64,000 nt of DNA from the sequence record MK568540.2. One strand, 5' to 3'. Made by a program: the position numbers and the translations under genes. Shown one piece after another: positions 3,675-44,872 of the stretch. The notes under the pieces were generated by a model. That model had not been told where the DNA came from. It was given only the letters and a program-made list of their open reading frames with translations, and made no database searches. Each line of letters starts with the position of its first letter. The first letter of the stretch is position 1.

Positions 3675-5168
3675 TTACGCTGTTCGAATCTTCTTGGCGA
3701 TTTTCCATTCACCTTCGTTGATAAAATCAGCTTGCACGTCAGACAGTTTACGAGCTTCTTCAAGTGAGAAGTCAGCAACTGTTACACCGTTTTCGAAGAT
3801 TGTCTGCATCACGCTCTGAGGGTGTACGCGATTGTCGTAATCTTCAGTAGAGAACGTCACGTAACCACGAGCTGCTGGGTTCGGATTTTCTGCATCGACT
3901 GCAATCAAATCTAAGAAACCTGCTTTTGATGCTTTTGTTGGGTCAGTCTTCGGCATTTTGAACACACTAACGTATTCGCCGTTGATGATCGCCGCTGACA
4001 TTTTCATTGCAAAACGTTGAGTATCACGGTCAAGTTGCTGAAGCAAACCACCACCCATACCGAATGCAATGTTTTCTGCCGACCAACCTTTACTTTCCAT
4101 GTAAGATAGAATTCGACGAATTTCTTCGATGTTCACGCCGTCGCCTTGAATGATACGGTAACTAGGGTGTAGAACTTTGTAACCCTTGCTGTTGATTGTG
4201 TAACCAACGTTCTTAGCAAGAATTTCAAGACCTTTCATTACTACATCTACAGGTACACCAGAGTCAGGACGAGCAACAAACGTACCGCCTTTACTGATGA
4301 TTAACTCTTTGAAACGACCAGTCGAGACACGATTCATTGCTGCTTCGTAGTCGTAGCTGTCCATTACACAAGCGTATAGAGCTGCGCCCCATTGCTCGAT
4401 AGAGTTCAAGAATGCTTGATCTTCGCCAAATTCTTTGTAGATTGTAGTTGTTGAGTGTTCACGTGCAGGGATAGAGAATCCCGCAATGAAGTCTTCAACA
4501 TCTTCAGCGTAAAGTTCTTCAACTGCAACAAGTGCTTCTACATTGTCAGTTCCCAAGAAGTTTTTCAAGTGAGCTGCGCCGCCAATAGCTGCTGATTCGC
4601 CACTTGACACACCACGAGAACCGAAGTCGTGAAGTTTAAACGGCTCTTGTTCTGCAATGCGTTCATCATCAACCGTTTTCTTCATGAATTCACGAATGAT
4701 TTTCTTCACTTCGAACGAGATCGTTGCTACAGTTGTCGGGTACCAAATCGCACGTAAGATAAACGTTTCAAGATAACCAGGTAGCCAACCGAAACGTGGA
4801 TCTGTGTTCTCAATCGTCAAGATAGGGTGCTTAACTGGTACTACAGTACCTTCTTTTACCGCACGAATCTTAATAGGCAGTTTGCCGTTCAGTTCGTTAA
4901 CGATGATTTCCCAACCCTTGTCATTGAAGACTTCAGAACCGAAGTGCTTTTTGAACAGACGTTTCGCACGCTTGACATCGTTCATTACAACACCTTTTTC
5001 GAGAATACGACACATGTATGCCATACCATCGATCATAATTTTGTCGAACTTGCCGCCCCGGCTTTCAACGTAATATTGACTGTACTCTAAACCACGAGGG
5101 AATTGAGACCAGTGTGAAACTTTGTAGCTGTCTGTTGCGATTGCGATATTTTGATTAAGATTAAGCAT
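3675..5168 (-). CDS. nadV: nicotinamide phosphoribosyltransferase (Nampt)
   Basis: TDSYKVSH, LHDFGSRG, PAREHS, RPDSG, IIQGDG, FGMGGGLLQ motifs; 497 aa. Confidence 0.95.
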   Translation of the reverse strand: MLNLNQNIAIATDSYKVSHWSQFPRGLEYSQYYVESRGGKFDKIMIDGMAYMCRILEKGVVMNDVKRAKRLFKKHFGSEVFNDKGWEIIVNELNGKLPIKIRAVKEGTVVPVKHPILTIENTDPRFGWLPGYLETFILRAIWYPTTVATISFEVKKIIREFMKKTVDDERIAEQEPFKLHDFGSRGVSSGESAAIGGAAHLKNFLGTDNVEALVAVEELYAEDVEDFIAGFSIPAREHSTTTIYKEFGEDQAFLNSIEQWGAALYACVMDSYDYEAAMNRVSTGRFKELIISKGGTFVARPDSGVPVDVVMKGLEILAKNVGYTINSKGYKVLHPSYRIIQGDGVNIEEIRRILSYMESKGWSAENIAFGMGGGLLQQLDRDTQRFAMKMSAAIINGEYVSVFKMPKTDPTKASKAGFLDLIAVDAENPNPAARGYVTFSTEDYDNRVHPQSVMQTIFENGVTVADFSLEEARKLSDVQADFINEGEWKIAKKIRTA

Positions 5169-5225
5169 TGTATGGCTCCCATTTTATGCTGTTAAAGTTT
5201 CTCGAATGTTCGAGTGTAAGTGCCA

Positions 5226-5729
5226 TTAAAAACGAGCTTTAAATGACATAGTTACGACTGGCACCCAGATATCAGAACCCATCAACAACCCAAGCTCTGC
5301 ACCTAAGTTATCAGTAGCCCAATAAGTAACTGATGGCTGAATCGCAGGTAGAATACCGAGATCATAAACTTCAGTATAACCAGTCGCTAGACCAAGAAAT
5401 AAATCATAGTCAATTTCTTTACTTGGTGTGTATGTGAAGTGATAACCTGCAACAAAACTACGCTCATAGAAGCTGTTTTCTAAAGTCATAACTTCCCAAT
5501 TTTTATATCTAACACCAATTGCATTGTTTGTTTCATTGTACTCTTTAAAAACAGACGTTTTACATTTATCTGCTAAATCAGGACAATATCCGTCACCTGA
5601 AAGGTGGTAAGACCATCCACCTAATCGAACCTGAACATCGTCAATGAACGTAGTCTGTTCGTTAGTAGATGCATTTGCGCTTGCAACGCTAGATAAAAGC
5701 AATAGTGATAGTGCAGTAAGTTTTTTCAT
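5226..5729 (-). CDS. outer-membrane beta-barrel protein, PagP-like
   Basis: signal peptide (ASA), WSYHLS, YNETNNAIG, NSFYERS, C-terminal Phe beta-signal (MSFKARF). Confidence 0.55.
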   Translation of the reverse strand: MKKLTALSLLLLSSVASANASTNEQTTFIDDVQVRLGGWSYHLSGDGYCPDLADKCKTSVFKEYNETNNAIGVRYKNWEVMTLENSFYERSFVAGYHFTYTPSKEIDYDLFLGLATGYTEVYDLGILPAIQPSVTYWATDNLGAELGLLMGSDIWVPVVTMSFKARF

Positions 5730-5792
5730 AATGTCTTCCTCTTATTGAATGAATACATTATATTATTCTTTTTCTCACATTGCAAGCTTTTT

Positions 5793-6326
5793 TTAATAAT
5801 ATTCGATGTTAATTTTAGCCGAAGACCCTACCGCAGTCGATAAGAAACTCTTCCATTGTGATTCATTGTTAGATGTCAACTCGTAAAAACGCTTTGACGG
5901 CGAGCGATGACTGAATATAAACACAGTACCACTTTCAGTTGTAACTCGTAGTGTTGATTGTGTCAGATCAGAAGACAATGCAATGAACGATTCAGTCGAT
6001 ATTTGGTCTTCGCTATATGCTATGTCAGTTACACTTCTACCACCAATAGTAGTAGGAGTCAACGAACCTGCGTTTTCGAAGTTCGGACTATTTTTCGCAT
6101 AACCCCAACCAGAAGAACGAGGTTCACCAAAACGATATAACAACCCTCGAACTATAGTATGCGAGAATGCAGATTTACCTCTAAGATCTCCCATTGATAT
6201 CGACCCGCTAGGTCTCTCTGCTAGGTCGCGCACATCTGCATCACCTAGCGAGATAGCCCCGCTAGGTCTGTCCAACTCGATTCGAACATCATTAAGTGAT
6301 ATTGGACCAGTTGATGGTAATCCCAT
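5793..6326 (-). CDS. late, probable virion/tail-associated protein
   Basis: N-terminal PSTGPISL...SGSISMGDLRGKS domain typical of phage virion proteins; TATAAATA promoter upstream. Confidence 0.5.
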   Translation of the reverse strand: MGLPSTGPISLNDVRIELDRPSGAISLGDADVRDLAERPSGSISMGDLRGKSAFSHTIVRGLLYRFGEPRSSGWGYAKNSPNFENAGSLTPTTIGGRSVTDIAYSEDQISTESFIALSSDLTQSTLRVTTESGTVFIFSHRSPSKRFYELTSNNESQWKSFLSTAVGSSAKINIEYY

Positions 6327-6353
6327 TATGTTATTCCTTTCATGTTAAAATCG

Positions 6354-6361
6354 TATTTATA
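6354..6361 (-). promoter_or_regulatory. T4-type late promoter
   Basis: exact TATAAATA on minus strand 28 bp upstream of 6326 start. Confidence 0.75.
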
Positions 6362-6366
6362 CATGA

Positions 6367-7152
6367 TTAACCGTTTTCACGAATGTATTTTACAAGCTTG
6401 GCGTAGTCTTGTGGTTTAAACATTCTAGGGAATTGATGTGACAACACTTCAGCTTCTTTGTACTGTTCTGCTGTTACAATCTGTGATTTTGCAATTCTCT
6501 GCGGATGCTTACTATTAGACAATGCATAACAGTAATCATCATCGAACGGATCATCACCTATAATATAATACTTTTCGTCCATGTAATAAACATGTTCTAC
6601 GTCAGAATTTTGCTGACTTGTTACAATATGCGATTTTGCAATCGCTGCTTCTCGTTCAGCTTCGACAATTGCTTCTTCAAGCTCAAGATCGGTAATGCCA
6701 TGATGAGTGTTGTTAATAGGTTCAGTTCGACCTTCTTCAAACCCCTCAGACGGTGAAAATACATCAATGGCTTGTAACTCGCACAATGCTTTATCTACGT
6801 CTGTTGCGTCAATGTACTGAGCGTTTAACGAAGATAGATCAGGGCGCCATGACTTACACGAATCAAGCTCGCCGAGATAGTGTGATTGACATCGACCAAC
6901 TTCACCACTTTCAGTTTTATATTCGACTGGTAGATTGCTAATTGACGGTTGATTGAATGCATAATCACGCCAGTGAAATTCACGAATAACCCATGACGGT
7001 AGTACTGAGTTCTTCAAGATATTTTCGTTCATAACTTCAGGACATTGACGCCATTCACGAACTGAACTTTCATCATTCGCTGAATTTGCCACTCGGTCGA
7101 ATGGGTGCATTTTGATCTTTAGATCTTCAATTGCGATATTCGTTCTTAACAT
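6367..7152 (-). CDS. hypothetical protein
   Basis: 261-aa ORF in minus-strand run. Confidence 0.7.
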   Translation of the reverse strand: MLRTNIAIEDLKIKMHPFDRVANSANDESSVREWRQCPEVMNENILKNSVLPSWVIREFHWRDYAFNQPSISNLPVEYKTESGEVGRCQSHYLGELDSCKSWRPDLSSLNAQYIDATDVDKALCELQAIDVFSPSEGFEEGRTEPINNTHHGITDLELEEAIVEAEREAAIAKSHIVTSQQNSDVEHVYYMDEKYYIIGDDPFDDDYCYALSNSKHPQRIAKSQIVTAEQYKEAEVLSHQFPRMFKPQDYAKLVKYIRENG

Positions 7153-7159
7153 GTTTTTC

Positions 7160-7861
7160 TCACTTATTCAATTCAACTTCAAGTTTATGCATTTTGCATT
7201 CGATTATCAACTTACGCGCTTCAGACCCGTCAGCTTGTGTTAATGGTTTACCTGCTTGCGTTAGCTCAAGTAACTTTGTTTTAGCTCGATTGCAGTCGCG
7301 TGCAGATTCAATGAGATAGTCATACTCATGCGGGTCTAACAGCTCGATTGTCGCGTCTTGAACATCATCCATATTGTTGATATTACCAGACAATGCGTTT
7401 TGTTCACGCTGATTTAACTCAGCTTGCATTTCAAGTTTTTCAACGCGCTGTGCTTTCTCTTCTAGAGATTCAGGAGCATCGTAATTACATTGCTCACTCA
7501 AACTAATACCATACTGCGTTCGCCACTGGTTACTCATCGTGCGTTCGTATGTACTGCGAATGTCGTCTTCGGCTTCGACAAGTGATGCAATCACATCACA
7601 GAAAGGGATTTCATCGTCTGAACGTCGCACTGCATTAGAACCGTATTTGTTACGAGTGGCAAGAGCAGTCCACAATGGGTTATACAAATAGTTACTAGCG
7701 TCAGCATCTGCCAGCCAGTAGTTGATCATTTCACGCTCTTTTTTATTCACAACTGCATTTACCGTAGTGAATTTTTTACCAGTCTTGGTTTCAAGTTGTG
7801 GTCTTTCACCACAACCTGCCAGTACTGCGACTGTAACTGCCACGAGAATTGATTTCTTCAC
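7160..7861 (-). CDS. lipoprotein, paralog of 903..1622
   Basis: GTG start, AGGAG SD, lipobox LAG-C, shared Cys motifs. Confidence 0.7.
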   Translation of the reverse strand: MKKSILVAVTVAVLAGCGERPQLETKTGKKFTTVNAVVNKKEREMINYWLADADASNYLYNPLWTALATRNKYGSNAVRRSDDEIPFCDVIASLVEAEDDIRSTYERTMSNQWRTQYGISLSEQCNYDAPESLEEKAQRVEKLEMQAELNQREQNALSGNINNMDDVQDATIELLDPHEYDYLIESARDCNRAKTKLLELTQAGKPLTQADGSEARKLIIECKMHKLEVELNK

Positions 7862-7862
7862 T

Positions 7863-7911
7863 CTAATACTCCTAATATCTCTAACTTCACTAAAACCACT
7901 AATACTACTAA
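7863..7911. repeat. 9-bp-period array (CTAA x6)
   Basis: CTAA at 7863, 7872, 7881, 7890, 7899, 7908. Confidence 0.75.
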
Positions 7912-7932
7912 GATGAGACGGAATTTTTCCGC

Positions 7933-8361
7933 CTAATCGGTTTCTGTCGCTTCGCTCTTCTCGATTAGATTACCTTCTAAGTCAACTTCACCATAGATAA
8001 AGTCGTTTTTGAATGTTTCCAAATCATAGAATGCTTCGTGATGTTCGCACAAATCAAACCCTTCATAGCTATTCAGCTTGCGAGTACTAATAGAGCTTCG
8101 AATCAATTCAAGGCTGCTGTTCTTTAAAATCTTGCTAATCAAATTCTCGTTGTACTCTGAGATATCTCGACCATAATCGTACTCATCGAATACGACTCTA
8201 ACTTGTCGGCGATCATGCTTGTCTACTAGAATAACTGCACGACACTTGATCGTTCCTTTAAATGTAAATGAACTAGACACATCGAATGATTTCTGTTCTG
8301 TGTAAGCTGCTACTTTCCATTCACGGTCTGGGAATATTTTTTTGAAAAGTTTCTTTAACAT
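7933..8361 (-). CDS. hypothetical protein (similar to 11218..11568)
   Basis: 142 aa, GAGG SD; WKV...KCR motif shared. Confidence 0.7.
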   Translation of the reverse strand: MLKKLFKKIFPDREWKVAAYTEQKSFDVSSSFTFKGTIKCRAVILVDKHDRRQVRVVFDEYDYGRDISEYNENLISKILKNSSLELIRSSISTRKLNSYEGFDLCEHHEAFYDLETFKNDFIYGEVDLEGNLIEKSEATETD

Positions 8362-8370
8362 GTTGACCTC

Positions 8371-8619
8371 TTATAGAACGATGCGAGTGTGACGACCGTC
8401 GAATTCAGCTTGCAAACCTGCATGGCGAAGAAGAGATTCTAAGTCTGCTAGATTTGGGACAGTGTACTTGCCAGAATCACGTAAGTATGTTGCGTAATCT
8501 GAAATGAAGTTATCGCTACCTGCTTTCATTGCATACTCAAGAACGAAGTTTGTGAACTCGTCTGCTGCTTTCTCGTTCTCGTCCCACCACATTAGAAGTT
8601 TGCGAAGATTGATTTTCAT
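8371..8619 (-). CDS. hypothetical protein
   Basis: 82 aa, AGAGAACATTATG leader. Confidence 0.7.
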   Translation of the reverse strand: MKINLRKLLMWWDENEKAADEFTNFVLEYAMKAGSDNFISDYATYLRDSGKYTVPNLADLESLLRHAGLQAEFDGRHTRIVL

Positions 8620-8660
8620 AATGTTCTCTCTTTTTGTTTAACTCGTTAGCTGTTGTGACT

Positions 8661-8699
8661 ATAATAATAAAAGTGGCTGCATAGCGCAACCACTTTTTT
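8661..8699 (-). promoter_or_regulatory. fused terminator/early promoter
   Basis: TTGCGC(8684-89)-17-TATTAT(8661-66) within aagtggtgc/gcaccactt-type hairpin. Confidence 0.75.
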
Positions 8700-8702
8700 C
8701 AA

Positions 8703-9032
8703 TTAATTTAAAATAACGTACATCGTTACCAAACTAGCTGCATGTAAGAACTGGTCAAAGCCAATGACTTGGAAGAACTTACGAGTTTCACCTTTCGCCC
8801 AAAGTGAGCTTGTCATTCTCGAAGTCGCATAGTCAACGACCATGTGCAACATACCAGTTAATATTGCAAACACGATACCGAATGGCAAGAAGCAGATTGC
8901 ATACGTGATACAGTGTCTTGCTAATGGCCACATGTTTTTGCTTTTGTTTAACGCTTGATGTTCTGTCTGTACGAAGAAATCAGCAATGAAATGCACTGCG
9001 AACAGTGCAAGTAAAGTTGTTAATGAGATCAT
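8703..9032 (-). CDS. DUF3307-like membrane protein
   Basis: HFIADF..Q, H...Y, H..VDY, GFDQFLH motifs; hydrophobic. Confidence 0.75.
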   Translation of the reverse strand: MISLTTLLALFAVHFIADFFVQTEHQALNKSKNMWPLARHCITYAICFLPFGIVFAILTGMLHMVVDYATSRMTSSLWAKGETRKFFQVIGFDQFLHAASLVTMYVILN

Positions 9033-9499
9033 TCAATCACCTTTAGAGGCTCGAATCGTACCGAGTCTTCCTTAGTTGCCCATGCTTGGTAAACTCGTTT
9101 CTTTGAGTTCTCTGTTTCGATGCGATTTTTGATGGCTGATTCAGCTAAAGCGCGTGCACCAGATTCGGTTTCATCACACCAACCACTCGGCTCCCAATGA
9201 TCGAAGATAATACCTTCGTTGAGTTCTTGAGTGTACCAGTAGTAGCCGTTACCTAATTCACCACAATCGCGACCGTAATCTTTGTTGTATTCATACACAA
9301 CACGATATTTCAGTAGCGGTTTTTCAGCTAAAGGGTCTGATTGAATCACTTTAGTACCGACTACACCTAGTGCAACTGCGATTAAAATTGATACAAGTGG
9401 CTTTGCTTTTACAAATTCGTTTACTTTTTCTAACATTGTTTTACTCTCTTGTTGTGGTTCATGGGTGTTGACTGGCATCCCGTTTTCATAAATGATCAT
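9029..9499 (-). CDS. hypothetical membrane-anchored protein
   Basis: 156 aa, one TM segment, ATGA overlap. Confidence 0.7.
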   Translation of the reverse strand: MIIYENGMPVNTHEPQQESKTMLEKVNEFVKAKPLVSILIAVALGVVGTKVIQSDPLAEKPLLKYRVVYEYNKDYGRDCGELGNGYYWYTQELNEGIIFDHWEPSGWCDETESGARALAESAIKNRIETENSKKRVYQAWATKEDSVRFEPLKVIE

Positions 9500-9978
9500 A
9501 ATTTCAAGCTAGAATAGTTGATAATTACCATCGATGTGTGAATGTACGACTGTGCAAGCTGACCGTTGTCTTCTGAGTAATTGTACGTGAACGCATAACC
9601 TTCAGTATACGGGTGCTTTGTAATACCAGTCACGCGAACAATATCTTGACCGCCTTTAAACGGTTTGCCTGATTTCTTCACTACGTCTTTGCCGATTGCA
9701 TGTAACGGGTCGTTGATTTCGCATAGAGTTTTGTCAATGCGCTTTTCGATACAACTAATTTCAGCTAAAATCTTTTCGTTCATTTCGTCGCGTTTCTGCC
9801 ACATGTACTGAATGTTGTCTGGTAAAGCAGACATGACACGCTGACCACGATGAGACAAATCATCGTTTAATGCTTCTTGGAAGCTAATGACTGGATCAAA
9901 CAATCTAACTGCTGCTCTTACGCGCATTGCTTGACGTGCAAATTCTTCTTGTGATTTCATTTCCAAAACTCCCACCAT
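9496..9978 (-). CDS. hypothetical protein
   Basis: ORF; true start probably MKSQEE (~9960). Confidence 0.65.
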   Translation of the reverse strand: MVGVLEMKSQEEFARQAMRVRAAVRLFDPVISFQEALNDDLSHRGQRVMSALPDNIQYMWQKRDEMNEKILAEISCIEKRIDKTLCEINDPLHAIGKDVVKKSGKPFKGGQDIVRVTGITKHPYTEGYAFTYNYSEDNGQLAQSYIHTSMVIINYSSLKL

Positions 9979-41775: not shown

Positions 41776-42996
41776 TTATTTTTTGACTCGTATTGGCATA
41801 TGACCACAACATTCATCAAGTATACCTTGTATTCGAGCAGCTTGATACGCACTAGATTTCTTCTGCCATTCTCGGCGAGTCTTGTACTTCAATGCATCTT
41901 CTTTTAGACGTTCGGTTGTCCAATAACCACTCGGCTTTCTTGTAGTAGTCATATGAGAACAACATTCATCAATTATACCACGTTTTCGAGCAGTTTGATA
42001 CGCACCACTAGAGTTCTTGTACCATTCATTTCGAGTTTTGTATTTCAATGCATCTTCTTTTAGACGTTCAAGTGTCCAATAACCACTCGGCTTCTGTCTT
42101 GTAGCGGGCATATGACCACAACATTCATCAATTATACCACGTTTTCGAGCAGCATCATAACCACTAGAGTTCTTCTGCCATTCATTTCGAGTTTTGTATT
42201 TCAATGCATCTTCTTTTAGACGTTCGGTTGTCCAATGCAACATATCACCACCAAGACTACCAGCCTTAGAACGATTCAAAATAACCCAATCGTTATTCGC
42301 GTAGTACTCAATATGTTCCGCCTCTGCAATCTGAGCAAGTTCCGGCTCCATGTAGTCAGTCAATCGCTCGAAAATCACATTCTCAATCCCAACTCGCTCT
42401 ATTAAATCTACAATCTGCGGCGTTCCTTTACGATGGTCGTGGAATCGTCTATCAGTATCATACGTCAACCCGATGTAAATCTCATTACCAGAATATATAC
42501 GATAGATACAACGCTTTGATAAATTCTTGACATTTGTCTTCATATGAGAACAACATTCATCAATTATACCACGTTGTTGAGCGGCACTATAAGCGCCACT
42601 AGAGTTCTTGGCCCATTCTCTGCGAGTCTTGTACTTCAATGCATCTTCTTTAAGACGTTCAAGTGTCCAATAACCATTCGCCTTCCTTGTAGTAGTCATA
42701 TGAGAACAACATTCATCGATCAACCCATGATAATGAGCGGCACTATAAGCGCCACTAGAGTTCTTGTGCCATTCATTTCTGGTCTGGTATTTCAATGCAT
42801 CTTCTTTTAGACGTTCAAGTGTCCAATAACCCCTCGGCTTTACCAGTGCTGTCATATGACGGCAGCACTCATCAAGCAATCCTCTCTTATGAGCAGCATC
42901 ATAACCACTACGTGATTTCTTCTGCCATTCACCACGAGTCTTGTACTTTAAAGCGTCTTCTTTAAGTAACCCAAGCGTCCATTTAATTCTAGCCAT
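41776..42996 (-). CDS. GIY-YIG endonuclease with six ~50-aa repeats
   Basis: same core and repeats (3 N-terminal, 3 C-terminal); start refined to MARIKW. Confidence 0.85.
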   Translation of the reverse strand: MARIKWTLGLLKEDALKYKTRGEWQKKSRSGYDAAHKRGLLDECCRHMTALVKPRGYWTLERLKEDALKYQTRNEWHKNSSGAYSAAHYHGLIDECCSHMTTTRKANGYWTLERLKEDALKYKTRREWAKNSSGAYSAAQQRGIIDECCSHMKTNVKNLSKRCIYRIYSGNEIYIGLTYDTDRRFHDHRKGTPQIVDLIERVGIENVIFERLTDYMEPELAQIAEAEHIEYYANNDWVILNRSKAGSLGGDMLHWTTERLKEDALKYKTRNEWQKNSSGYDAARKRGIIDECCGHMPATRQKPSGYWTLERLKEDALKYKTRNEWYKNSSGAYQTARKRGIIDECCSHMTTTRKPSGYWTTERLKEDALKYKTRREWQKKSSAYQAARIQGILDECCGHMPIRVKK

Positions 42997-43006
42997 AATA
43001 TTCTCT

Positions 43007-43058
43007 AATTCAAAAACTGTAGAATACAAAAAAGGGCTGCATAGCGCAACCCCTTTCT
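43007..43058 (-). promoter_or_regulatory. fused terminator/promoter (copy of 41720..41770)
   Basis: TTGCGC(43044-49)-17-TATTCT(43021-26). Confidence 0.75.
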
Positions 43059-43748: not shown

Positions 43749-44078
43749 TCATATCTTAACCTTATTAATGTTCTCTATAATGTATTTCAACCAGCTCTTG
43801 CGCTCATATGCACGCAACTTACGACGCTCACAAGGCGGATGATACGCACAGATAAAAGAATAACAATCTTCTAACTCATTAGGCATATCACTCTGGCGTA
43901 CATACATACGCTGCAAATGCTTTAATTTAAGCTTAATCAAGCTAACCATTTCTGAATTCACACCACGCTGCAACTCTAAACAGGTGTACACGCGATGCAA
44001 CTCACCACAATTCAATAACTCTAGAGCACGAGCACGTACATGGCGATTCACTCTGTAATTCTTAAACAACATTACCAA
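43749..44078 (-). CDS. YTC/R..WL family paralog 5
   Basis: RALELL..YTC...SFI...RKSWLKYI. Confidence 0.65.
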   Translation of the reverse strand: MVMLFKNYRVNRHVRARALELLNCGELHRVYTCLELQRGVNSEMVSLIKLKLKHLQRMYVRQSDMPNELEDCYSFICAYHPPCERRKLRAYERKSWLKYIIENINKVKI

Positions 44079-44218
44079 TTACCAGTGAACATCATTACAC
44101 CACAGAACATCGTGGCGATTAATGCAAAGTCTAAAATACATGTACCAAGGTACAAGTCACTTGGTCGCTCACTGTATTTCATGTCGCGACTCATATAAAA
44201 TAACGCCAATGTAATCAC
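44072..44218 (-). CDS. 48-aa membrane microprotein (not in ORF track)
   Basis: GGAGG SD, GTG start, hydrophobic C-terminus. Confidence 0.45.
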   Translation of the reverse strand: MITLALFYMSRDMKYSERPSDLYLGTCILDFALIATMFCGVMMFTGNW

Positions 44219-44388
44219 AATTACCTCCGTAGGCAGTTCAAATCTCTTTGCATTCTCTCACATAATGCCGCTGGCTGTCAAGCAAAAAGATGCGAAGCGG
44301 ATTAGATTTTCACAAATGATGTAAGGTTTTAGACTGCCGCGTACCACACAGGAGCCGATGAGTCTTTCACCATTTTTTCACTAAAAAG

Positions 44389-44497
44389 TTATCCACATTA
44401 TCCACAGACTTATGCACAGCTAAATCATGTTTTTATACACAGATTTCAGACACTTATGCACAATCTCATACACATATTATCCACAGATTTATACACA
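44389..44497 (+). repeat. array of DnaA boxes (candidate origin or DnaA-titration site)
   Basis: TTATCCACA 44389, 44398, 44477; TTATGCACA 44410, 44454; TTATACACA 44433, 44489; TCATACACA 44466; all same strand, in a ~370 bp non-coding gap. Confidence 0.85.
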
Positions 44498-44588
44498 TGT
44501 GCATTTAAACGAGGCATGGTGCGATATATTAAAAACAATACTATCTGTACCATGCTCTGAGACGCTGTGAGAGCGATTCTAAGCGTTT

Positions 44589-44705
44589 TTAGTCATCGTT
44601 TGATATATCGCTCAGGCACCAACCGGCTATAGCTGCTAGAGCACATAGAACAAGCATGAGGTAGCCGATAGGTATATCGTTTAGTAGATTGATTAGTGTT
44701 TGCAT
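44589..44705 (-). CDS. 38-aa membrane microprotein (not in ORF track)
   Basis: MQTLINLLNDIPIGYLMLVLCALAAIAGW..; TAATG coupling. Confidence 0.45.
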   Translation of the reverse strand: MQTLINLLNDIPIGYLMLVLCALAAIAGWCLSDISNDD

Positions 44706-44872
44706 TACGATAGTTTAAAGCTCAATGATAGAATATCAATTAGGTAATACTGAATGATACAGTTAAACGCAGTTGTTATTAGCAGAGCCACGAATGGAAC
44801 TGTTCGTTTTGATTTATCGGTTACAAACAGATATGTAGTGAGAATCAGAATTAAGATTGATAGTGCGAACAT
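44705..44872 (-). CDS. 55-aa membrane microprotein (not in ORF track)
   Basis: MFALSILILILTTYLF...; AGGA SD. Confidence 0.5.
   Translation of the reverse strand: MFALSILILILTTYLFVTDKSKRTVPFVALLITTAFNCIIQYYLIDILSLSFKLS

What the first reader, a model, noticed from the sequence alone, without database searches (positions are those of the whole stretch)
44389..44497. Dense, same-orientation array of host DnaA boxes in a T4-like phage
Seen: seven exact TTATNCACA 9-mers (44389, 44398, 44410, 44433, 44454, 44477, 44489) plus TCATACACA (44466) in 109 bp. Start-to-start spacings are 9, 12, 23, 21, 12, 11, 12, so mostly one or two helical turns. They sit in the largest non-coding gap of the window (~44219-44588). 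AATCATGTTTTTA (44423-35) is a 12/13 match to the IHF consensus WATCAANNNNTTR and lies in the widest gap. I found no GATC in the island. Known: TTWTNCACA is the gammaproteobacterial DnaA box; oriC, datA and DARS are DnaA-box clusters with IHF sites; characterised T4 origins use R-loops and recombination, not DnaA. Inference: either a phage origin that recruits host DnaA, or a datA-like sink that titrates or inactivates DnaA-ATP and shuts down host initiation once the phage genome amplifies.
Basis: partly seen in the sequence, partly recalled or inferred. Interest (0 to 1): 0.92.

Follow-up and report, generated by a model that had tools for sequence, protein, structure and literature searches.

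The report
Host DnaA-box array in Vibrio T4-like phage
A family of large T4-like Vibrio phages keeps, under clear purifying selection, a tight row of eight binding sites for the bacterial replication initiator DnaA in a non-coding gap, which suggests that these phages use or disarm the host's initiator; T4-type phages were not thought to do either.

Summary
The window is Vibrio phage Va3, a KVP40-like Schizotequatrovirus. Positions 44389-44497 hold seven exact TTATNCACA 9-mers plus TCATACACA, all on the + strand, in the largest non-coding gap of the window. It is the only box cluster in the 247.6-kb genome (chance about 1e-15).

Fourteen related phages from at least two genera carry the array. 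Among nine aligned, only 8% of consensus box positions vary, against 50% of the degenerate fifth positions and 57% of spacer positions (p = 4.5e-8). Selection therefore acts on DnaA's own specificity. Box spacing is conserved, and the phage encodes no DnaA homologue. The KVP40 sub-lineage has let the array decay while keeping both flanks, so it is dispensable.

The lack of GATC is uninformative. The layout does not resemble datA.

My best reading is a head-to-tail DnaA oligomer platform pointing at the least stable AT-rich stretch of the gap, acting as an accessory DnaA-assisted origin (about 0.4). Rivals are a DnaA sink, transcription control and a DNA-end role. The closest phage precedent is the DnaA boxes in the T5 injection-stop region. 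I rate it a new variant of a known kind, interest about 0.6.

The parts
44389..44497 (+). DnaA-box array: eight head-to-tail 9-mers, named B1 to B8. B1 44389 TTATCCACA, B2 44398 TTATCCACA, B3 44410 TTATGCACA, B4 44433 TTATACACA, B5 44454 TTATGCACA, B6 44466 TCATACACA, B7 44477 TTATCCACA, B8 44489 TTATACACA.
   Evidence: Searches give presence, uniqueness and chance. Searches show 5/64 consensus positions variable against 4/8 fifth positions and 21/37 spacer positions in 9 phages (Fisher p = 4.5e-8).
44454..44497 (+). Tight sub-cluster B5-B8 with 3, 2 and 3 bp between boxes (11-12 bp period). This is the spacing at which neighbouring DnaA molecules interact in oriC arrays.
   Evidence: for the spacing. 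One search shows spacing conserved across genera. The DnaA-DnaA interaction at 2-3 bp gaps is established knowledge of E. coli oriC, not tested here.
44389..44418 (+). Sub-cluster B1/B2/B3. B1 and B2 abut with no gap and are probably mutually exclusive sites. B2 and B3 are a pair with the 3-bp spacer GAC.
   Evidence: In VS2, QD01, nt-1 and CZ01, B1 is TTATCCACG and B2 is TAATCCACA. The pair motif TNATCCACAGACTTATNCACA is common in bacterial oriC regions.
44498..44588 (+). Conserved right flank, retained even in box-less relatives. It contains the invariant GGTGCGATATAT, ATGCTCTGA and ATTCTAAGCG-TTTT motifs.
   Evidence: Alignments A1 and A3. Pattern scans found this element only in KVP40-like phages.
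44524..44545 (.). AT-rich core, the least stable duplex stretch of the gap. It lies 26-48 bp 3' of B8, on the side where the unwinding element lies relative to box R1 in E. coli oriC. Its T-rich strand is the - strand, as at oriC.
   Evidence: the 31-bp windows starting at 44514-44529 reach -31.9 kcal/mol; those sampled at 44520 and 44525 (about -33.5) rank in the least stable 1.4-1.6% of the window. Searches give the oriC orientation from the MG1655 sequence.
44510..44559 (+). Imperfect hairpin (arms 44510-44523 and 44546-44559) enclosing the AT-rich core. It folds better on the + strand because of G-U/G-T pairs.
   Evidence: -15.5 kcal/mol consensus fold, one-sided changes keep pairs, no compensatory changes, and the hairpin is partly broken in nt-1; the - strand gives only -1.8 kcal/mol.
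44521..44533 (.). Left arm of an inverted repeat, GCGATATATTAAA. The partner TTTGATATATCGC lies at 44599-44611. The palindromic core is GATATATC, a possible operator for an unknown protein.
   Evidence: 13-nt arms, 92% complementary. The motif is invariant in relatives.
44290..44388 (.). Partly conserved left flank between the array and the leftward promoter (invariant CCGATGAG and a T-run). GenBank records of three phage groups open here, at 44293 and at 44322/3.
44252..44281 (-). Sigma-70-type promoter-like site (TTGACA, 18 nt, TG-GAGAAT; 10 of 12) reading away from the array into the downstream genes. The same site is present in KVP40.
44072..44218 (-). First downstream gene (Va3_346 family, phrog_16778, unknown function), with GGAGG 7 nt before a GTG start at 44218.
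44589..44872 (-). Two small hydrophobic ORFs (38 aa at 44589-44705 and 55 aa at 44705-44872) that bound the gap on the right. Va3 does not annotate them; XZ1 and ValKK3 do.
   Evidence: phrog_32164.

Best explanation
The island is a selectively maintained binding array for the host replication initiator DnaA. I put about 0.85 on that part.

Eight 9-mers in one orientation, seven of them perfect high-affinity boxes, sit 9-12 or 21-23 bp apart. Host DnaA should occupy them. The 2-3 bp gaps allow neighbouring molecules to touch, so the array should carry one head-to-tail DnaA oligomer. That oligomer points at the most easily melted stretch of the gap (44524-44545), which lies 26 bp beyond the last box.

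The most likely use is an accessory replication start assisted by host DnaA (about 0.4 for the whole statement). DnaA would open, or hold open, the AT-rich stretch. A variant is that the DnaA-loaded array stalls read-through transcription just past that stretch and so favours an R-loop. Either way the phage's own T4-type helicase loader, helicase and primase could then start forks. Like the individual T4 origins, it would be dispensable, which fits its decay in the KVP40 sub-lineage.

Shown: the array, its uniqueness, selection on the DnaA consensus, conserved spacing, orientation relative to the AT-rich stretch, and the absence of a phage DnaA.

Inferred: DnaA binding, oligomer formation, unwinding and origin activity.
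For: 1. Seven exact and one near box lie in 109 bp, and this is the only cluster in 247.6 kb.
2. In nine phages from at least two genera, 8% of consensus positions vary, against 50% of fifth positions, 57% of spacers and 43-59% of flanks.
3. Box spacing is conserved although the spacers mutate. There is one 1-nt indel in the array, while the flanks carry 12-30-nt indels.
4. All boxes share one orientation with an 11-12 bp period. This matches the low-affinity arrays of E. coli oriC (established knowledge) and many other viral arrays.
5. The least stable duplex of the gap lies 3' of the last box, on the same side and with the same T-rich-strand polarity as the unwinding element next to R1 in E. 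coli oriC.
6. The Va3 genome encodes no DnaA homologue; the best tblastn E-value is 0.4.
7. The DNA of these phages is essentially unmodified. Only 0.01% of G is replaced in phi-Grn1 and phi-ST2 (PMC10516641), and no dCMP hydroxymethylase is annotated. Host proteins can therefore read the boxes.
8. The T4 replication review does not mention DnaA and notes that T4 origins share no sequence motif (PMC3016281). This leaves room for a different opening device. That T4 origins are individually dispensable, and that KVP40-like phages lack MotA, are from my memory.
Against: - GC skew follows gene strand only and does not switch at the array.
- Genes on both sides run the same way.
- No DnaA-trio run lies next to the last box on either strand.
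- There are no 13-mer repeats, no GATC and no opposed boxes for loading a second helicase.
- The AT-rich element is only about 22 bp long, and box-less relatives conserve it equally well, so it has a function of its own.
- No promoter reads from the array into that element.
- A T4-type replisome has never been shown to start at a DnaA-opened site.
- All-consensus boxes bind ADP-DnaA as well as ATP-DnaA, which suits a sink as well as an origin.
- Genes flanking similar arrays in other viral contigs are rarely replication genes.
Confidence: 0.4

Rival explanations
1. DnaA sink. The array does nothing for phage replication itself. As the genome amplifies to hundreds of copies, its eight high-affinity boxes per copy soak up host DnaA. 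This stops new rounds of host chromosome initiation and alters DnaA-controlled host genes. It could also promote DnaA-ATP hydrolysis as datA does.
For: All boxes are consensus or one-off high-affinity types, which bind both nucleotide forms of DnaA (established knowledge). This is the densest possible packing of strong sites. The Va3 clade has raised the count of perfect boxes from 4-5 to 7. Dispensability in the KVP40 lineage fits an accessory takeover device.
Against: Independent titration sites need no common orientation, phasing or conserved spacing, yet all three are conserved. The defining datA layout of boxes around an essential IHF site is absent: the IHF match is chance-level and not conserved, and datA looks different. 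Titration would act only late, after amplification, when the benefit is small.
Confidence: 0.25
2. Transcription control. DnaA bound to the array acts as a roadblock or insulator between the upstream and downstream leftward transcription units, or as a distant activator or repressor of the promoter at 44281-44252. Early gene expression would then be tied to the host's DnaA level.
For: The array sits between two same-strand gene blocks. No intrinsic terminator for the - strand was found. A good promoter-like site lies 108 bp beyond B1 and is conserved. DnaA is a known transcription factor and roadblock in E. coli, and it modulates lambda pR (established knowledge).
Against: Known DnaA-regulated promoters use one to three boxes close to or overlapping the promoter, not eight boxes more than 100 bp away. 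The promoter is equally conserved in box-less relatives. Nothing is known about the function of the flanking genes.
Confidence: 0.15
3. DNA-end or entry function. As proposed for the T5 injection-stop region, DnaA (largely membrane-associated) binds the array to hold or organise phage DNA near a physical end at entry or packaging.
For: In cultured phages, same-orientation arrays often lie by genome ends. Examples are the T5-like left terminal repeat, the first 190 bp of the Berlinvirus A7 record, and the last 90 bp of Arthrobacter phage Seahorse. Records from at least two laboratories open 66-96 bp left of this array. Two of those assemblies were plain SOAPdenovo output.
Against: T4-type genomes are circularly permuted by headful packaging and have no fixed ends (PMC3016281). 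The box-less phage PVA8 opens at the same homologous site, so the break does not depend on the boxes. The T5 model is itself untested.
Confidence: 0.1
4. Iterons for a phage-encoded protein. The 9-mers are bound by an unidentified phage DNA-binding protein and only resemble DnaA boxes.
For: T4 oriE has evenly spaced direct repeats of unknown role. Most neighbouring genes are of unknown function.
Against: All eight specified positions match the DnaA consensus, and the tolerated variation falls on DnaA's degenerate fifth base. No phage DnaA-like domain was found. The T4 oriE repeats are coding repeats in gene 5 with a 24-nt period and contain no DnaA box. The same motif recurs in unrelated viral contigs and in bacterial origins.
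Confidence: 0.05

Closest known systems
DnaA-oligomerisation region of gammaproteobacterial oriC (E. coli left half: R1, R5M, tau2, I1, I2)
   Same: It has several DnaA boxes in one orientation with 2-3 bp between neighbours. An easily melted AT-rich stretch lies on the 3' side of the TTATCCACA reading, with the T-rich strand in the same polarity.
   Different: All boxes here are high-affinity consensus sites rather than a few strong sites plus ATP-dependent weak ones. There is no opposed right half, no 13-mers, no GATC cluster, no supported IHF site, no skew switch and no nearby dnaA. The replicon is a lytic phage with its own T4-type replisome.
DnaA boxes of the T5 injection-stop (iss) region in the left terminal repeat of T5-like phages (Davison preprint, 10.1101/866236)
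   Same: It is a conserved set of about eight DnaA boxes in a large untranslated region of a virulent phage that does not need DnaA for its known origins. The boxes are in pairs separated by 3 bp, for example TTATCCACA-GAC-TTATCCACA.
   Different: The T5 boxes are split over two inverted-repeat modules kilobases apart, about half are non-consensus, and they lie in a terminal repeat of a genome with fixed ends. Here eight boxes form one head-to-tail block with no inverted-repeat frame, in a phage type with permuted ends. The T5 function is only a hypothesis.
E. coli datA (DnaA-titrating and DnaA-ATP-hydrolysing locus)
   Same: It is a non-origin cluster of high-affinity DnaA boxes that lowers initiation potential. 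This is a candidate role for a multi-copy phage array.
   Different: In the MG1655 sequence, datA has two exact boxes 162 bp apart plus near-boxes of mixed orientation, around an AT-rich IHF site. The phage array is far denser, runs in one direction, and has no conserved IHF site.
DnaA boxes at plasmid and phage-plasmid origins (P1 oriR, RK2 oriV, F, pSC101)
   Same: These are tandem consensus DnaA boxes on an extrachromosomal replicon that recruit host DnaA as a helper (from my knowledge; not tested here).
   Different: Those origins also have iterons and an adjacent gene for their own Rep initiator, and they use the host helicase. No iterons of another kind or rep gene lie nearby here, and the phage brings its own helicase, loader and primase.
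T4 origins oriF/oriG (promoter plus unwinding element, R-loop) and the oriE repeats
   Same: It is a short, dispensable, non-conserved cis element of about 100 bp with an AT-rich unwinding element. Evenly spaced direct repeats are also seen at T4 oriE (PMC3016281).
   Different: No promoter reads into the AT-rich element here. The T4 oriE repeats are 24-nt-period coding repeats in gene 5, and no DnaA box lies within 10 kb of them. The T4 replication review never mentions DnaA.

Membership tests
DnaA-box cluster (DnaA-binding DNA element) | Several matches to TTWTNCACA within about 100-300 bp, in excess of chance | tested here: met
   Seven exact boxes and one one-off box lie in 109 bp. It is the only cluster in the genome, with a chance of about 9e-16.
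DnaA-box cluster (DnaA-binding DNA element) | Evolutionary constraint on the consensus positions but not on the degenerate fifth base | tested here: met
   5/64 consensus positions vary against 4/8 fifth positions and 21/37 spacer positions (p = 4.5e-8).
DnaA-box cluster (DnaA-binding DNA element) | Binding by the host's DnaA | not testable with these tools
   This needs EMSA, footprinting or ChIP. That Vibrio DnaA uses the E. coli-type box is established knowledge (Vibrio harveyi oriC works in E. coli); I did not test it.
oriC-type DnaA-dependent origin | AT-rich unwinding element next to the boxes, on the correct side | tested here: inconclusive
   The least stable stretch of the gap lies 26-48 bp 3' of B8 with the oriC-like polarity. 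It is short, however, and box-less relatives conserve it equally well.
oriC-type DnaA-dependent origin | DnaA-trios ((NAN) three or more times within 16 bp of a box), as in the basal unwinding system (PMC8287927) | tested here: not met
   There is no such run on either strand on the side of the AT-rich element. A minimal run of three lies on the opposite side, in the wrong polarity.
oriC-type DnaA-dependent origin | Boxes in both orientations, 13-mers, GATC cluster, IHF site | tested here: not met
   There is one orientation only, no GATC, no 13-mer repeats, and the IHF match is chance-level and not conserved.
oriC-type DnaA-dependent origin | Switch of nucleotide skew or gene orientation at the site | tested here: not met
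   Skew follows the coding strand, and all neighbouring genes are on the - strand.
oriC-type DnaA-dependent origin | Initiation of replication at the site | not testable with these tools
   This needs marker-frequency or nascent-strand sequencing, 2D gels, or a plasmid amplification assay.
datA-type DnaA sink | High-affinity boxes arranged around an essential IHF site | tested here: not met
   The IHF match is at chance frequency (27 per 8.7 kb) and is absent from VS2, QD01, nt-1 and CZ01. The layout is unlike MG1655 datA.
datA-type DnaA sink | Lowers host initiation or stimulates DnaA-ATP hydrolysis | not testable with these tools
   This needs ori/ter measurement, flow cytometry and a hydrolysis assay.
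T4-type R-loop origin (oriF/oriG) | A promoter reading into a downstream unwinding element | tested here: inconclusive
   No + strand promoter lies in or beside the array. A weak - strand site (9/12) lies about 165 bp upstream of the AT-rich element, at chance frequency. The strong promoter reads away.
T5-type iss DnaA-box set | Box pairs with 3-bp spacers embedded in two inverted-repeat modules within a terminal repeat | tested here: not met
   Pairs with 3-bp spacers are present (B2-B3, B5-B6, B7-B8). No inverted-repeat modules frame them, and no terminal repeat is known. Record ends do cluster nearby, which I cannot explain.
Rep-protein iterons | 17-22 bp direct repeats next to the gene of their own initiator | tested here: not met
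   The repeat unit is the 9-bp DnaA box. The neighbouring proteins have no Pfam match and belong to PHROGs of unknown function.

The most novel reading that the evidence does not exclude
A lytic T4-type phage fires one of its origins with the host's initiator. A head-to-tail DnaA filament on the eight-box array opens the adjacent AT-rich element, or stalls transcription there to make an R-loop, and the phage's own gp59/gp41/gp61-type primosome takes over. This would be a hybrid of bacterial initiation and a viral replisome, which has not been described. The many similar arrays in other viral contigs hint that the use of DnaA by virulent phages may be widespread.
Probability: 0.3. Interest if true: 0.85.

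Novelty: new variant of a known kind. Interest (0 to 1): 0.62.

Why it matters
T4-type phages are the textbook case of replication that is independent of the host initiator. The T4 replication review does not mention DnaA at all.

A conserved, selected DnaA platform in a T4-like family means that the host initiator is either recruited by the phage or neutralised by it. This probably became possible because these phages keep ordinary, readable DNA.

Either outcome would add a new way for phages to interact with the bacterial cell cycle. The work could be done in Vibrio natriegens, a laboratory host of nt-1, QD01 and CZ01.

The scans also show that head-to-tail DnaA-box arrays occur in many unrelated viral contigs, and often next to the genome ends of cultured phages. 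Outside P1, lambda and a hypothesis for T5, this pattern has hardly been studied.

Tried and rejected
- **Chance or low complexity:** rejected by shuffles, the whole-genome scan and Poisson statistics.
- **Coding region:** a 47-aa + strand ORF overlaps part of the array, and QD01 annotates one. The substitution pattern has a 9-bp logic and VS2/QD01 carry a 1-nt indel, so I treat the array as non-coding.
- **RNA gene:** there is no tRNA and no Rfam hit in the gap.
- **Repeated intergenic cassette (PeSL-like):** the flanks occur nowhere else in the genome.
- **Capture from a host chromosome:** bacterial genomes and metagenomes share only the boxes, and the conserved flank is found in no bacterium.
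- **Phage-encoded DnaA:** none found. The weak hit, Va3_149, is a DUF6934 protein.
- **IHF site and GATC absence:** uninformative.
- **GC-skew evidence for an origin:** none.
- **DnaA-trios:** none in the right place.
- **Targeted destruction of boxes in KVP40:** not supported, since core and spacer positions diverged equally, at about 50% against 54-62% identity.
- **Guilt by association in other viral arrays:** flanking genes are mostly unknown, and only 1 of 150 is a Phage_rep_O.
- **More family members:** IMG/VR holds only KVP40 and VH7D, and JGI metagenomes hold none.
- **Literature:** no paper in the library links DnaA boxes with KVP40-like or T4-like phages. The KVP40 genome paper is not held.
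- **Homology of T4 oriE repeats to the array:** none.
Full report
**Identity of the window.** A 701-bp query around the finding matches Vibrio phage Va3 (MK568540.2, Straboviridae, Schizotequatrovirus; host V. alginolyticus) at 100% identity. The window corresponds to bases 183568-247567 of that 247,567-bp record.

**The observation.** The + strand carries TTATCCACA (44389), TTATCCACA (44398), TTATGCACA (44410), TTATACACA (44433), TTATGCACA (44454), TCATACACA (44466), TTATCCACA (44477) and TTATACACA (44489). I call these B1 to B8. Spacings are 9, 12, 23, 21, 12, 11 and 12 bp.
- The window holds 12 exact TTATNCACA against 4.07 +/- 1.9 in shuffles.
- I assembled the whole Va3 genome from five fetched pieces. 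It has 25 exact boxes, against about 13 expected from base composition. This is the only place with two or more within 150 bp.
- The chance of seven or more same-strand boxes in 109 bp anywhere in the genome is about 9e-16.
- By the record's annotation the array lies in the largest non-coding gap of the window: 682 bp between Va3_346 and Va3_347, with 268 bp the next largest.
- Two small hydrophobic ORFs, annotated in relatives but not in Va3, narrow the gap to 44219-44588.

- The IHF-like 13-mer is where stated. One-mismatch matches to that consensus occur 27 times in 8.7 kb here, and this one is not conserved in relatives.
- The island has no GATC, but only 0.95 is expected, so P = 0.39.
- Neither point carries information.

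**Conservation.** The array is present in 17 GenBank records of 14 phages: Va3, VH7D, phi-Grn1, phi-ST2, R10Z, R11Z, PVA23, ValKK3, XZ1, VS1, VS2, QD01, CZ01 and nt-1. Their listed hosts are V. alginolyticus, V. harveyi, V. splendidus and V. natriegens. No record annotates it as a feature. nt-1 belongs to another genus, Mylasvirus.

In an alignment of nine array-bearing phages, variable positions are distributed as follows:

| Position class | Variable / total | Share |
|---|---|---|
| Consensus box positions | 5 / 64 | 8% |
| Degenerate fifth positions | 4 / 8 | 50% |
| Spacer positions | 21 / 37 | 57% |
| Flanks | – | 43-59% |

Fisher p is 4.5e-8 for consensus positions against spacers plus fifth positions, and 1.3e-10 against the flanks. 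This is the footprint of a reader with DnaA's own specificity. Spacer lengths are kept, with one 1-nt indel in VS2/QD01, whereas the flanks carry 12-30-nt indels.

**Loss in the KVP40 sub-lineage.** KVP40, phi-pp2 and PVA8 have no box at the homologous place, although both flanks are 75-83% identical. The records V09, PG216 and TCU-VP03 align like KVP40, but I did not read their sequences. In KVP40 and phi-pp2, the 109-bp interval has drifted to about 50% identity in box cores and spacers alike. That points to relaxed constraint or replacement, not to targeted removal of boxes. The array is therefore selected where it is present, but it is dispensable.

**What reads the boxes.**
- A tblastn search with E. 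coli DnaA finds nothing in the Va3 genome; the best E-value is 0.4. The protein under that hit is a DUF6934 protein.
- The DNA of this group is almost unmodified. Only 0.01% of G is replaced in phi-Grn1 and phi-ST2 (PMC10516641), and no dCMP hydroxymethylase is annotated. Unlike T4 DNA, it can be read by host DNA-binding proteins.
- That Vibrio DnaA uses the E. coli-type box is established knowledge; I did not test it.
- I put about 0.85 on host DnaA being the ligand.

**Anatomy of the gap.** All neighbouring genes are on the - strand. Following transcription from right to left, the order is:
1. The end of the upstream block (stop codon at 44589).
2. A conserved right element, 44498-44588.
3. 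The array.
4. A partly conserved left element, 44290-44388.
5. A good sigma-70-type promoter-like site at 44281-44252 (TTGACA, 18 nt, TG-GAGAAT), also present in KVP40.
6. GGAGG and a GTG start at 44218.

The right element is invariant in parts (GGTGCGATATAT, ATGCTCTGA, ATTCTAAGCG-TTTT), even in box-less phages.
- It contains the least stable duplex stretch of the gap. Windows of 31 bp starting at 44514-44529 reach -31.9 kcal/mol, and those sampled at 44520 and 44525 rank in the least stable 1.4-1.6% of the window.
- An imperfect hairpin encloses that stretch and folds better on the + strand (-15.5 against -1.8 kcal/mol). No compensatory changes support it.
- A palindromic motif, GATATATC, recurs as an inverted repeat at 44521-44533 and 44599-44611.
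- The flanks occur nowhere else in the genome and in no bacterial genome or metagenome scanned.
- Flanking proteins have no Pfam match, and their PHROGs are of unknown function.

**Comparison with known DnaA elements, using real sequences.**
- **oriC.** In MG1655 oriC the unwinding element lies on the 3' side of box R1 when R1 is read as TTATCCACA, and the T-rich strand is the one on which the box reads TGTGGATAA. The phage array has the same polarity towards its AT-rich stretch.
- **Origin hallmarks that are missing.** There is no skew switch, no opposed boxes, no 13-mers, no GATC, and no DnaA-trio run in the right place (rules from PMC8287927).
- **datA.** MG1655 datA has a few dispersed boxes of mixed orientation around an IHF site, which is unlike this block.
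- **T4 origins.** They work through promoter-driven R-loops, and their review never mentions DnaA (PMC3016281). The T4 oriE 'iterons' are 24-nt-period coding repeats in gene 5, with no DnaA box within 10 kb.
- **T5.** The closest phage precedent is the T5 injection-stop region. It has about eight DnaA boxes, in pairs 3 bp apart, conserved in 25 T5-like phages, and their function is only hypothesised (10.1101/866236). I confirmed the pair motif TTATCCACA-GAC-TTATCCACA in a T5-like record.

**Wider context.**
Arrays reach 10 boxes per 200 bp, typically TTATCCACAG with 2-3 bp spacers.
- Of these arrays, 102 of 120 are intergenic. Flanking genes are mostly unknown, and only 1 of 150 is a Phage_rep_O.
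- In cultured phages such arrays often lie beside genome ends: T5-like terminal repeats, the first 190 bp of the Berlinvirus A7 record, and the last 90 bp of Arthrobacter phage Seahorse.
- The records of R10Z/R11Z open at window 44293. Those of PVA23, PVA8 and PC-Liy1 open at 44322/3, 66-96 bp left of the array. PVA8 has no boxes, and the PVA assemblies were plain SOAPdenovo output. I cannot explain this.

**Mechanism.** The one orientation, the 11-12 bp period and the conserved spacing argue for a cooperative head-to-tail DnaA oligomer rather than independent sites. In characterised systems such platforms open DNA or load helicases.

My best reading (0.4) is an accessory origin assisted by host DnaA. 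It would open or hold open 44524-44545 for the phage's own primosome. A variant is that the loaded array stalls read-through transcription just past that stretch to favour an R-loop.

The rivals are a multi-copy DnaA sink (0.25), transcription control or a roadblock (0.15), a DNA-end or entry role as proposed for T5 (0.10), and iterons for a phage protein (0.05).

None of the functional steps is shown. All of them can be tested in Vibrio natriegens with nt-1-type phages.

**Verdict.** This is a real, conserved and previously unremarked DnaA-box array in a T4-like phage family. No paper in the searched library links DnaA boxes with these phages. It is a new variant of a known kind of element, and its function is open.

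Noticed in passing
window 44293 and 44322-44323: GenBank records of R10Z and R11Z start at window 44293. Those of PVA23, PVA8, vB_ValM_PVA8 and PC-Liy1 open at the site homologous to 44322/3, which is 66-96 bp left of the array. PVA8 lacks the boxes. The partial record TCU_VP02_YC ends at 44557. That at least two laboratories opened a 247-kb permuted genome within 30 bp of each other is unlikely by chance. The cause is unknown; it could be a coverage drop, population heterogeneity or a physical end.
   Followed up: partly
Flanking genes are mostly unknown: GP88 six times, terminases and portal proteins, and only one Phage_rep_O.
   Followed up: partly
L293:1-190; L294:1090-1182; L292:2501-2582: In cultured phages, DnaA-box arrays often lie next to physical genome ends. 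Berlinvirus Shigella phage A7 has 4 exact and about 6 near boxes in the first 190 bp of its record. Arthrobacter phage Seahorse has 3 exact boxes in its last 90 bp. T5-like phages carry them in the left terminal repeat, and Streptomyces phages such as Gilson about 7 kb from the right end.
   Followed up: partly
window 44498-44611: The right flank is conserved even in box-less KVP40-type phages. It has the invariant GGTGCGATATAT and ATTCTAAGCG-TTTT, a + strand hairpin with G-U pairs (44510-44523 / 44546-44559), and the palindromic motif GATATATC repeated in inverted orientation (44521-44533 / 44599-44611). It could be an operator, a small RNA or an unwinding element. It has no Rfam match and occurs in no bacterial genome.
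   Followed up: partly
window 44589-44705 and 44705-44872 (- strand): Two small hydrophobic ORFs (38 and 55 aa; the second is phrog_32164) are not annotated in the Va3 record but are annotated in XZ1 and ValKK3.
   Followed up: partly
L008:1990-2535; L006:3491-4030; L003:3116-3646: The gap is a hotspot for gene gain. phi-Grn1 has a 561-bp insertion carrying a 181-aa ORF (phrog_32648) just right of the array. phi-pp2 has the same family at the same place. nt-1 and CZ01 have an unrelated ORF of about 175 aa between the left gene and the array.
   Followed up: partly
window 41776-43029 (- strand): A 417-aa protein is built of about seven repeats of a module of roughly 45 aa (…WTLERLKEDALKYKTRxEW…DECCxHM…) around a weak GIY-YIG-like segment. 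Its other Pfam hits (insulin, SusE and others) look like artefacts of the cysteine-rich repeats. The neighbouring gene Va3_342 carries the same phiGrn1_0289 note in the record.
   Followed up: no
and 91 hits (Microviridae records, e.g. PQ006258.1 3776-3830): Several gokushovirus-like microviruses from rodent faeces carry tandem DnaA-box arrays near or in their replication initiator gene.
   Followed up: no
L297:3403-3570 (T4 76000-86000): The direct repeats at T4 oriE are coding repeats of gene 5 with a 24-nt period (GTTGAAGGTAAT…). There is no TTWTNCACA within 10 kb of oriE.
   Followed up: yes
L013:4810-9568 (Va3 4810-9568): Va3 carries the 7-deazaguanine pathway genes (QueC, QueF-like, FolE, QueD-like). 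In the close relatives phi-Grn1 and phi-ST2, only 0.01% of G is modified (about 35-44 per million nucleotides, or some 20 sites per genome). Where those few sites lie is unknown.
   Followed up: no
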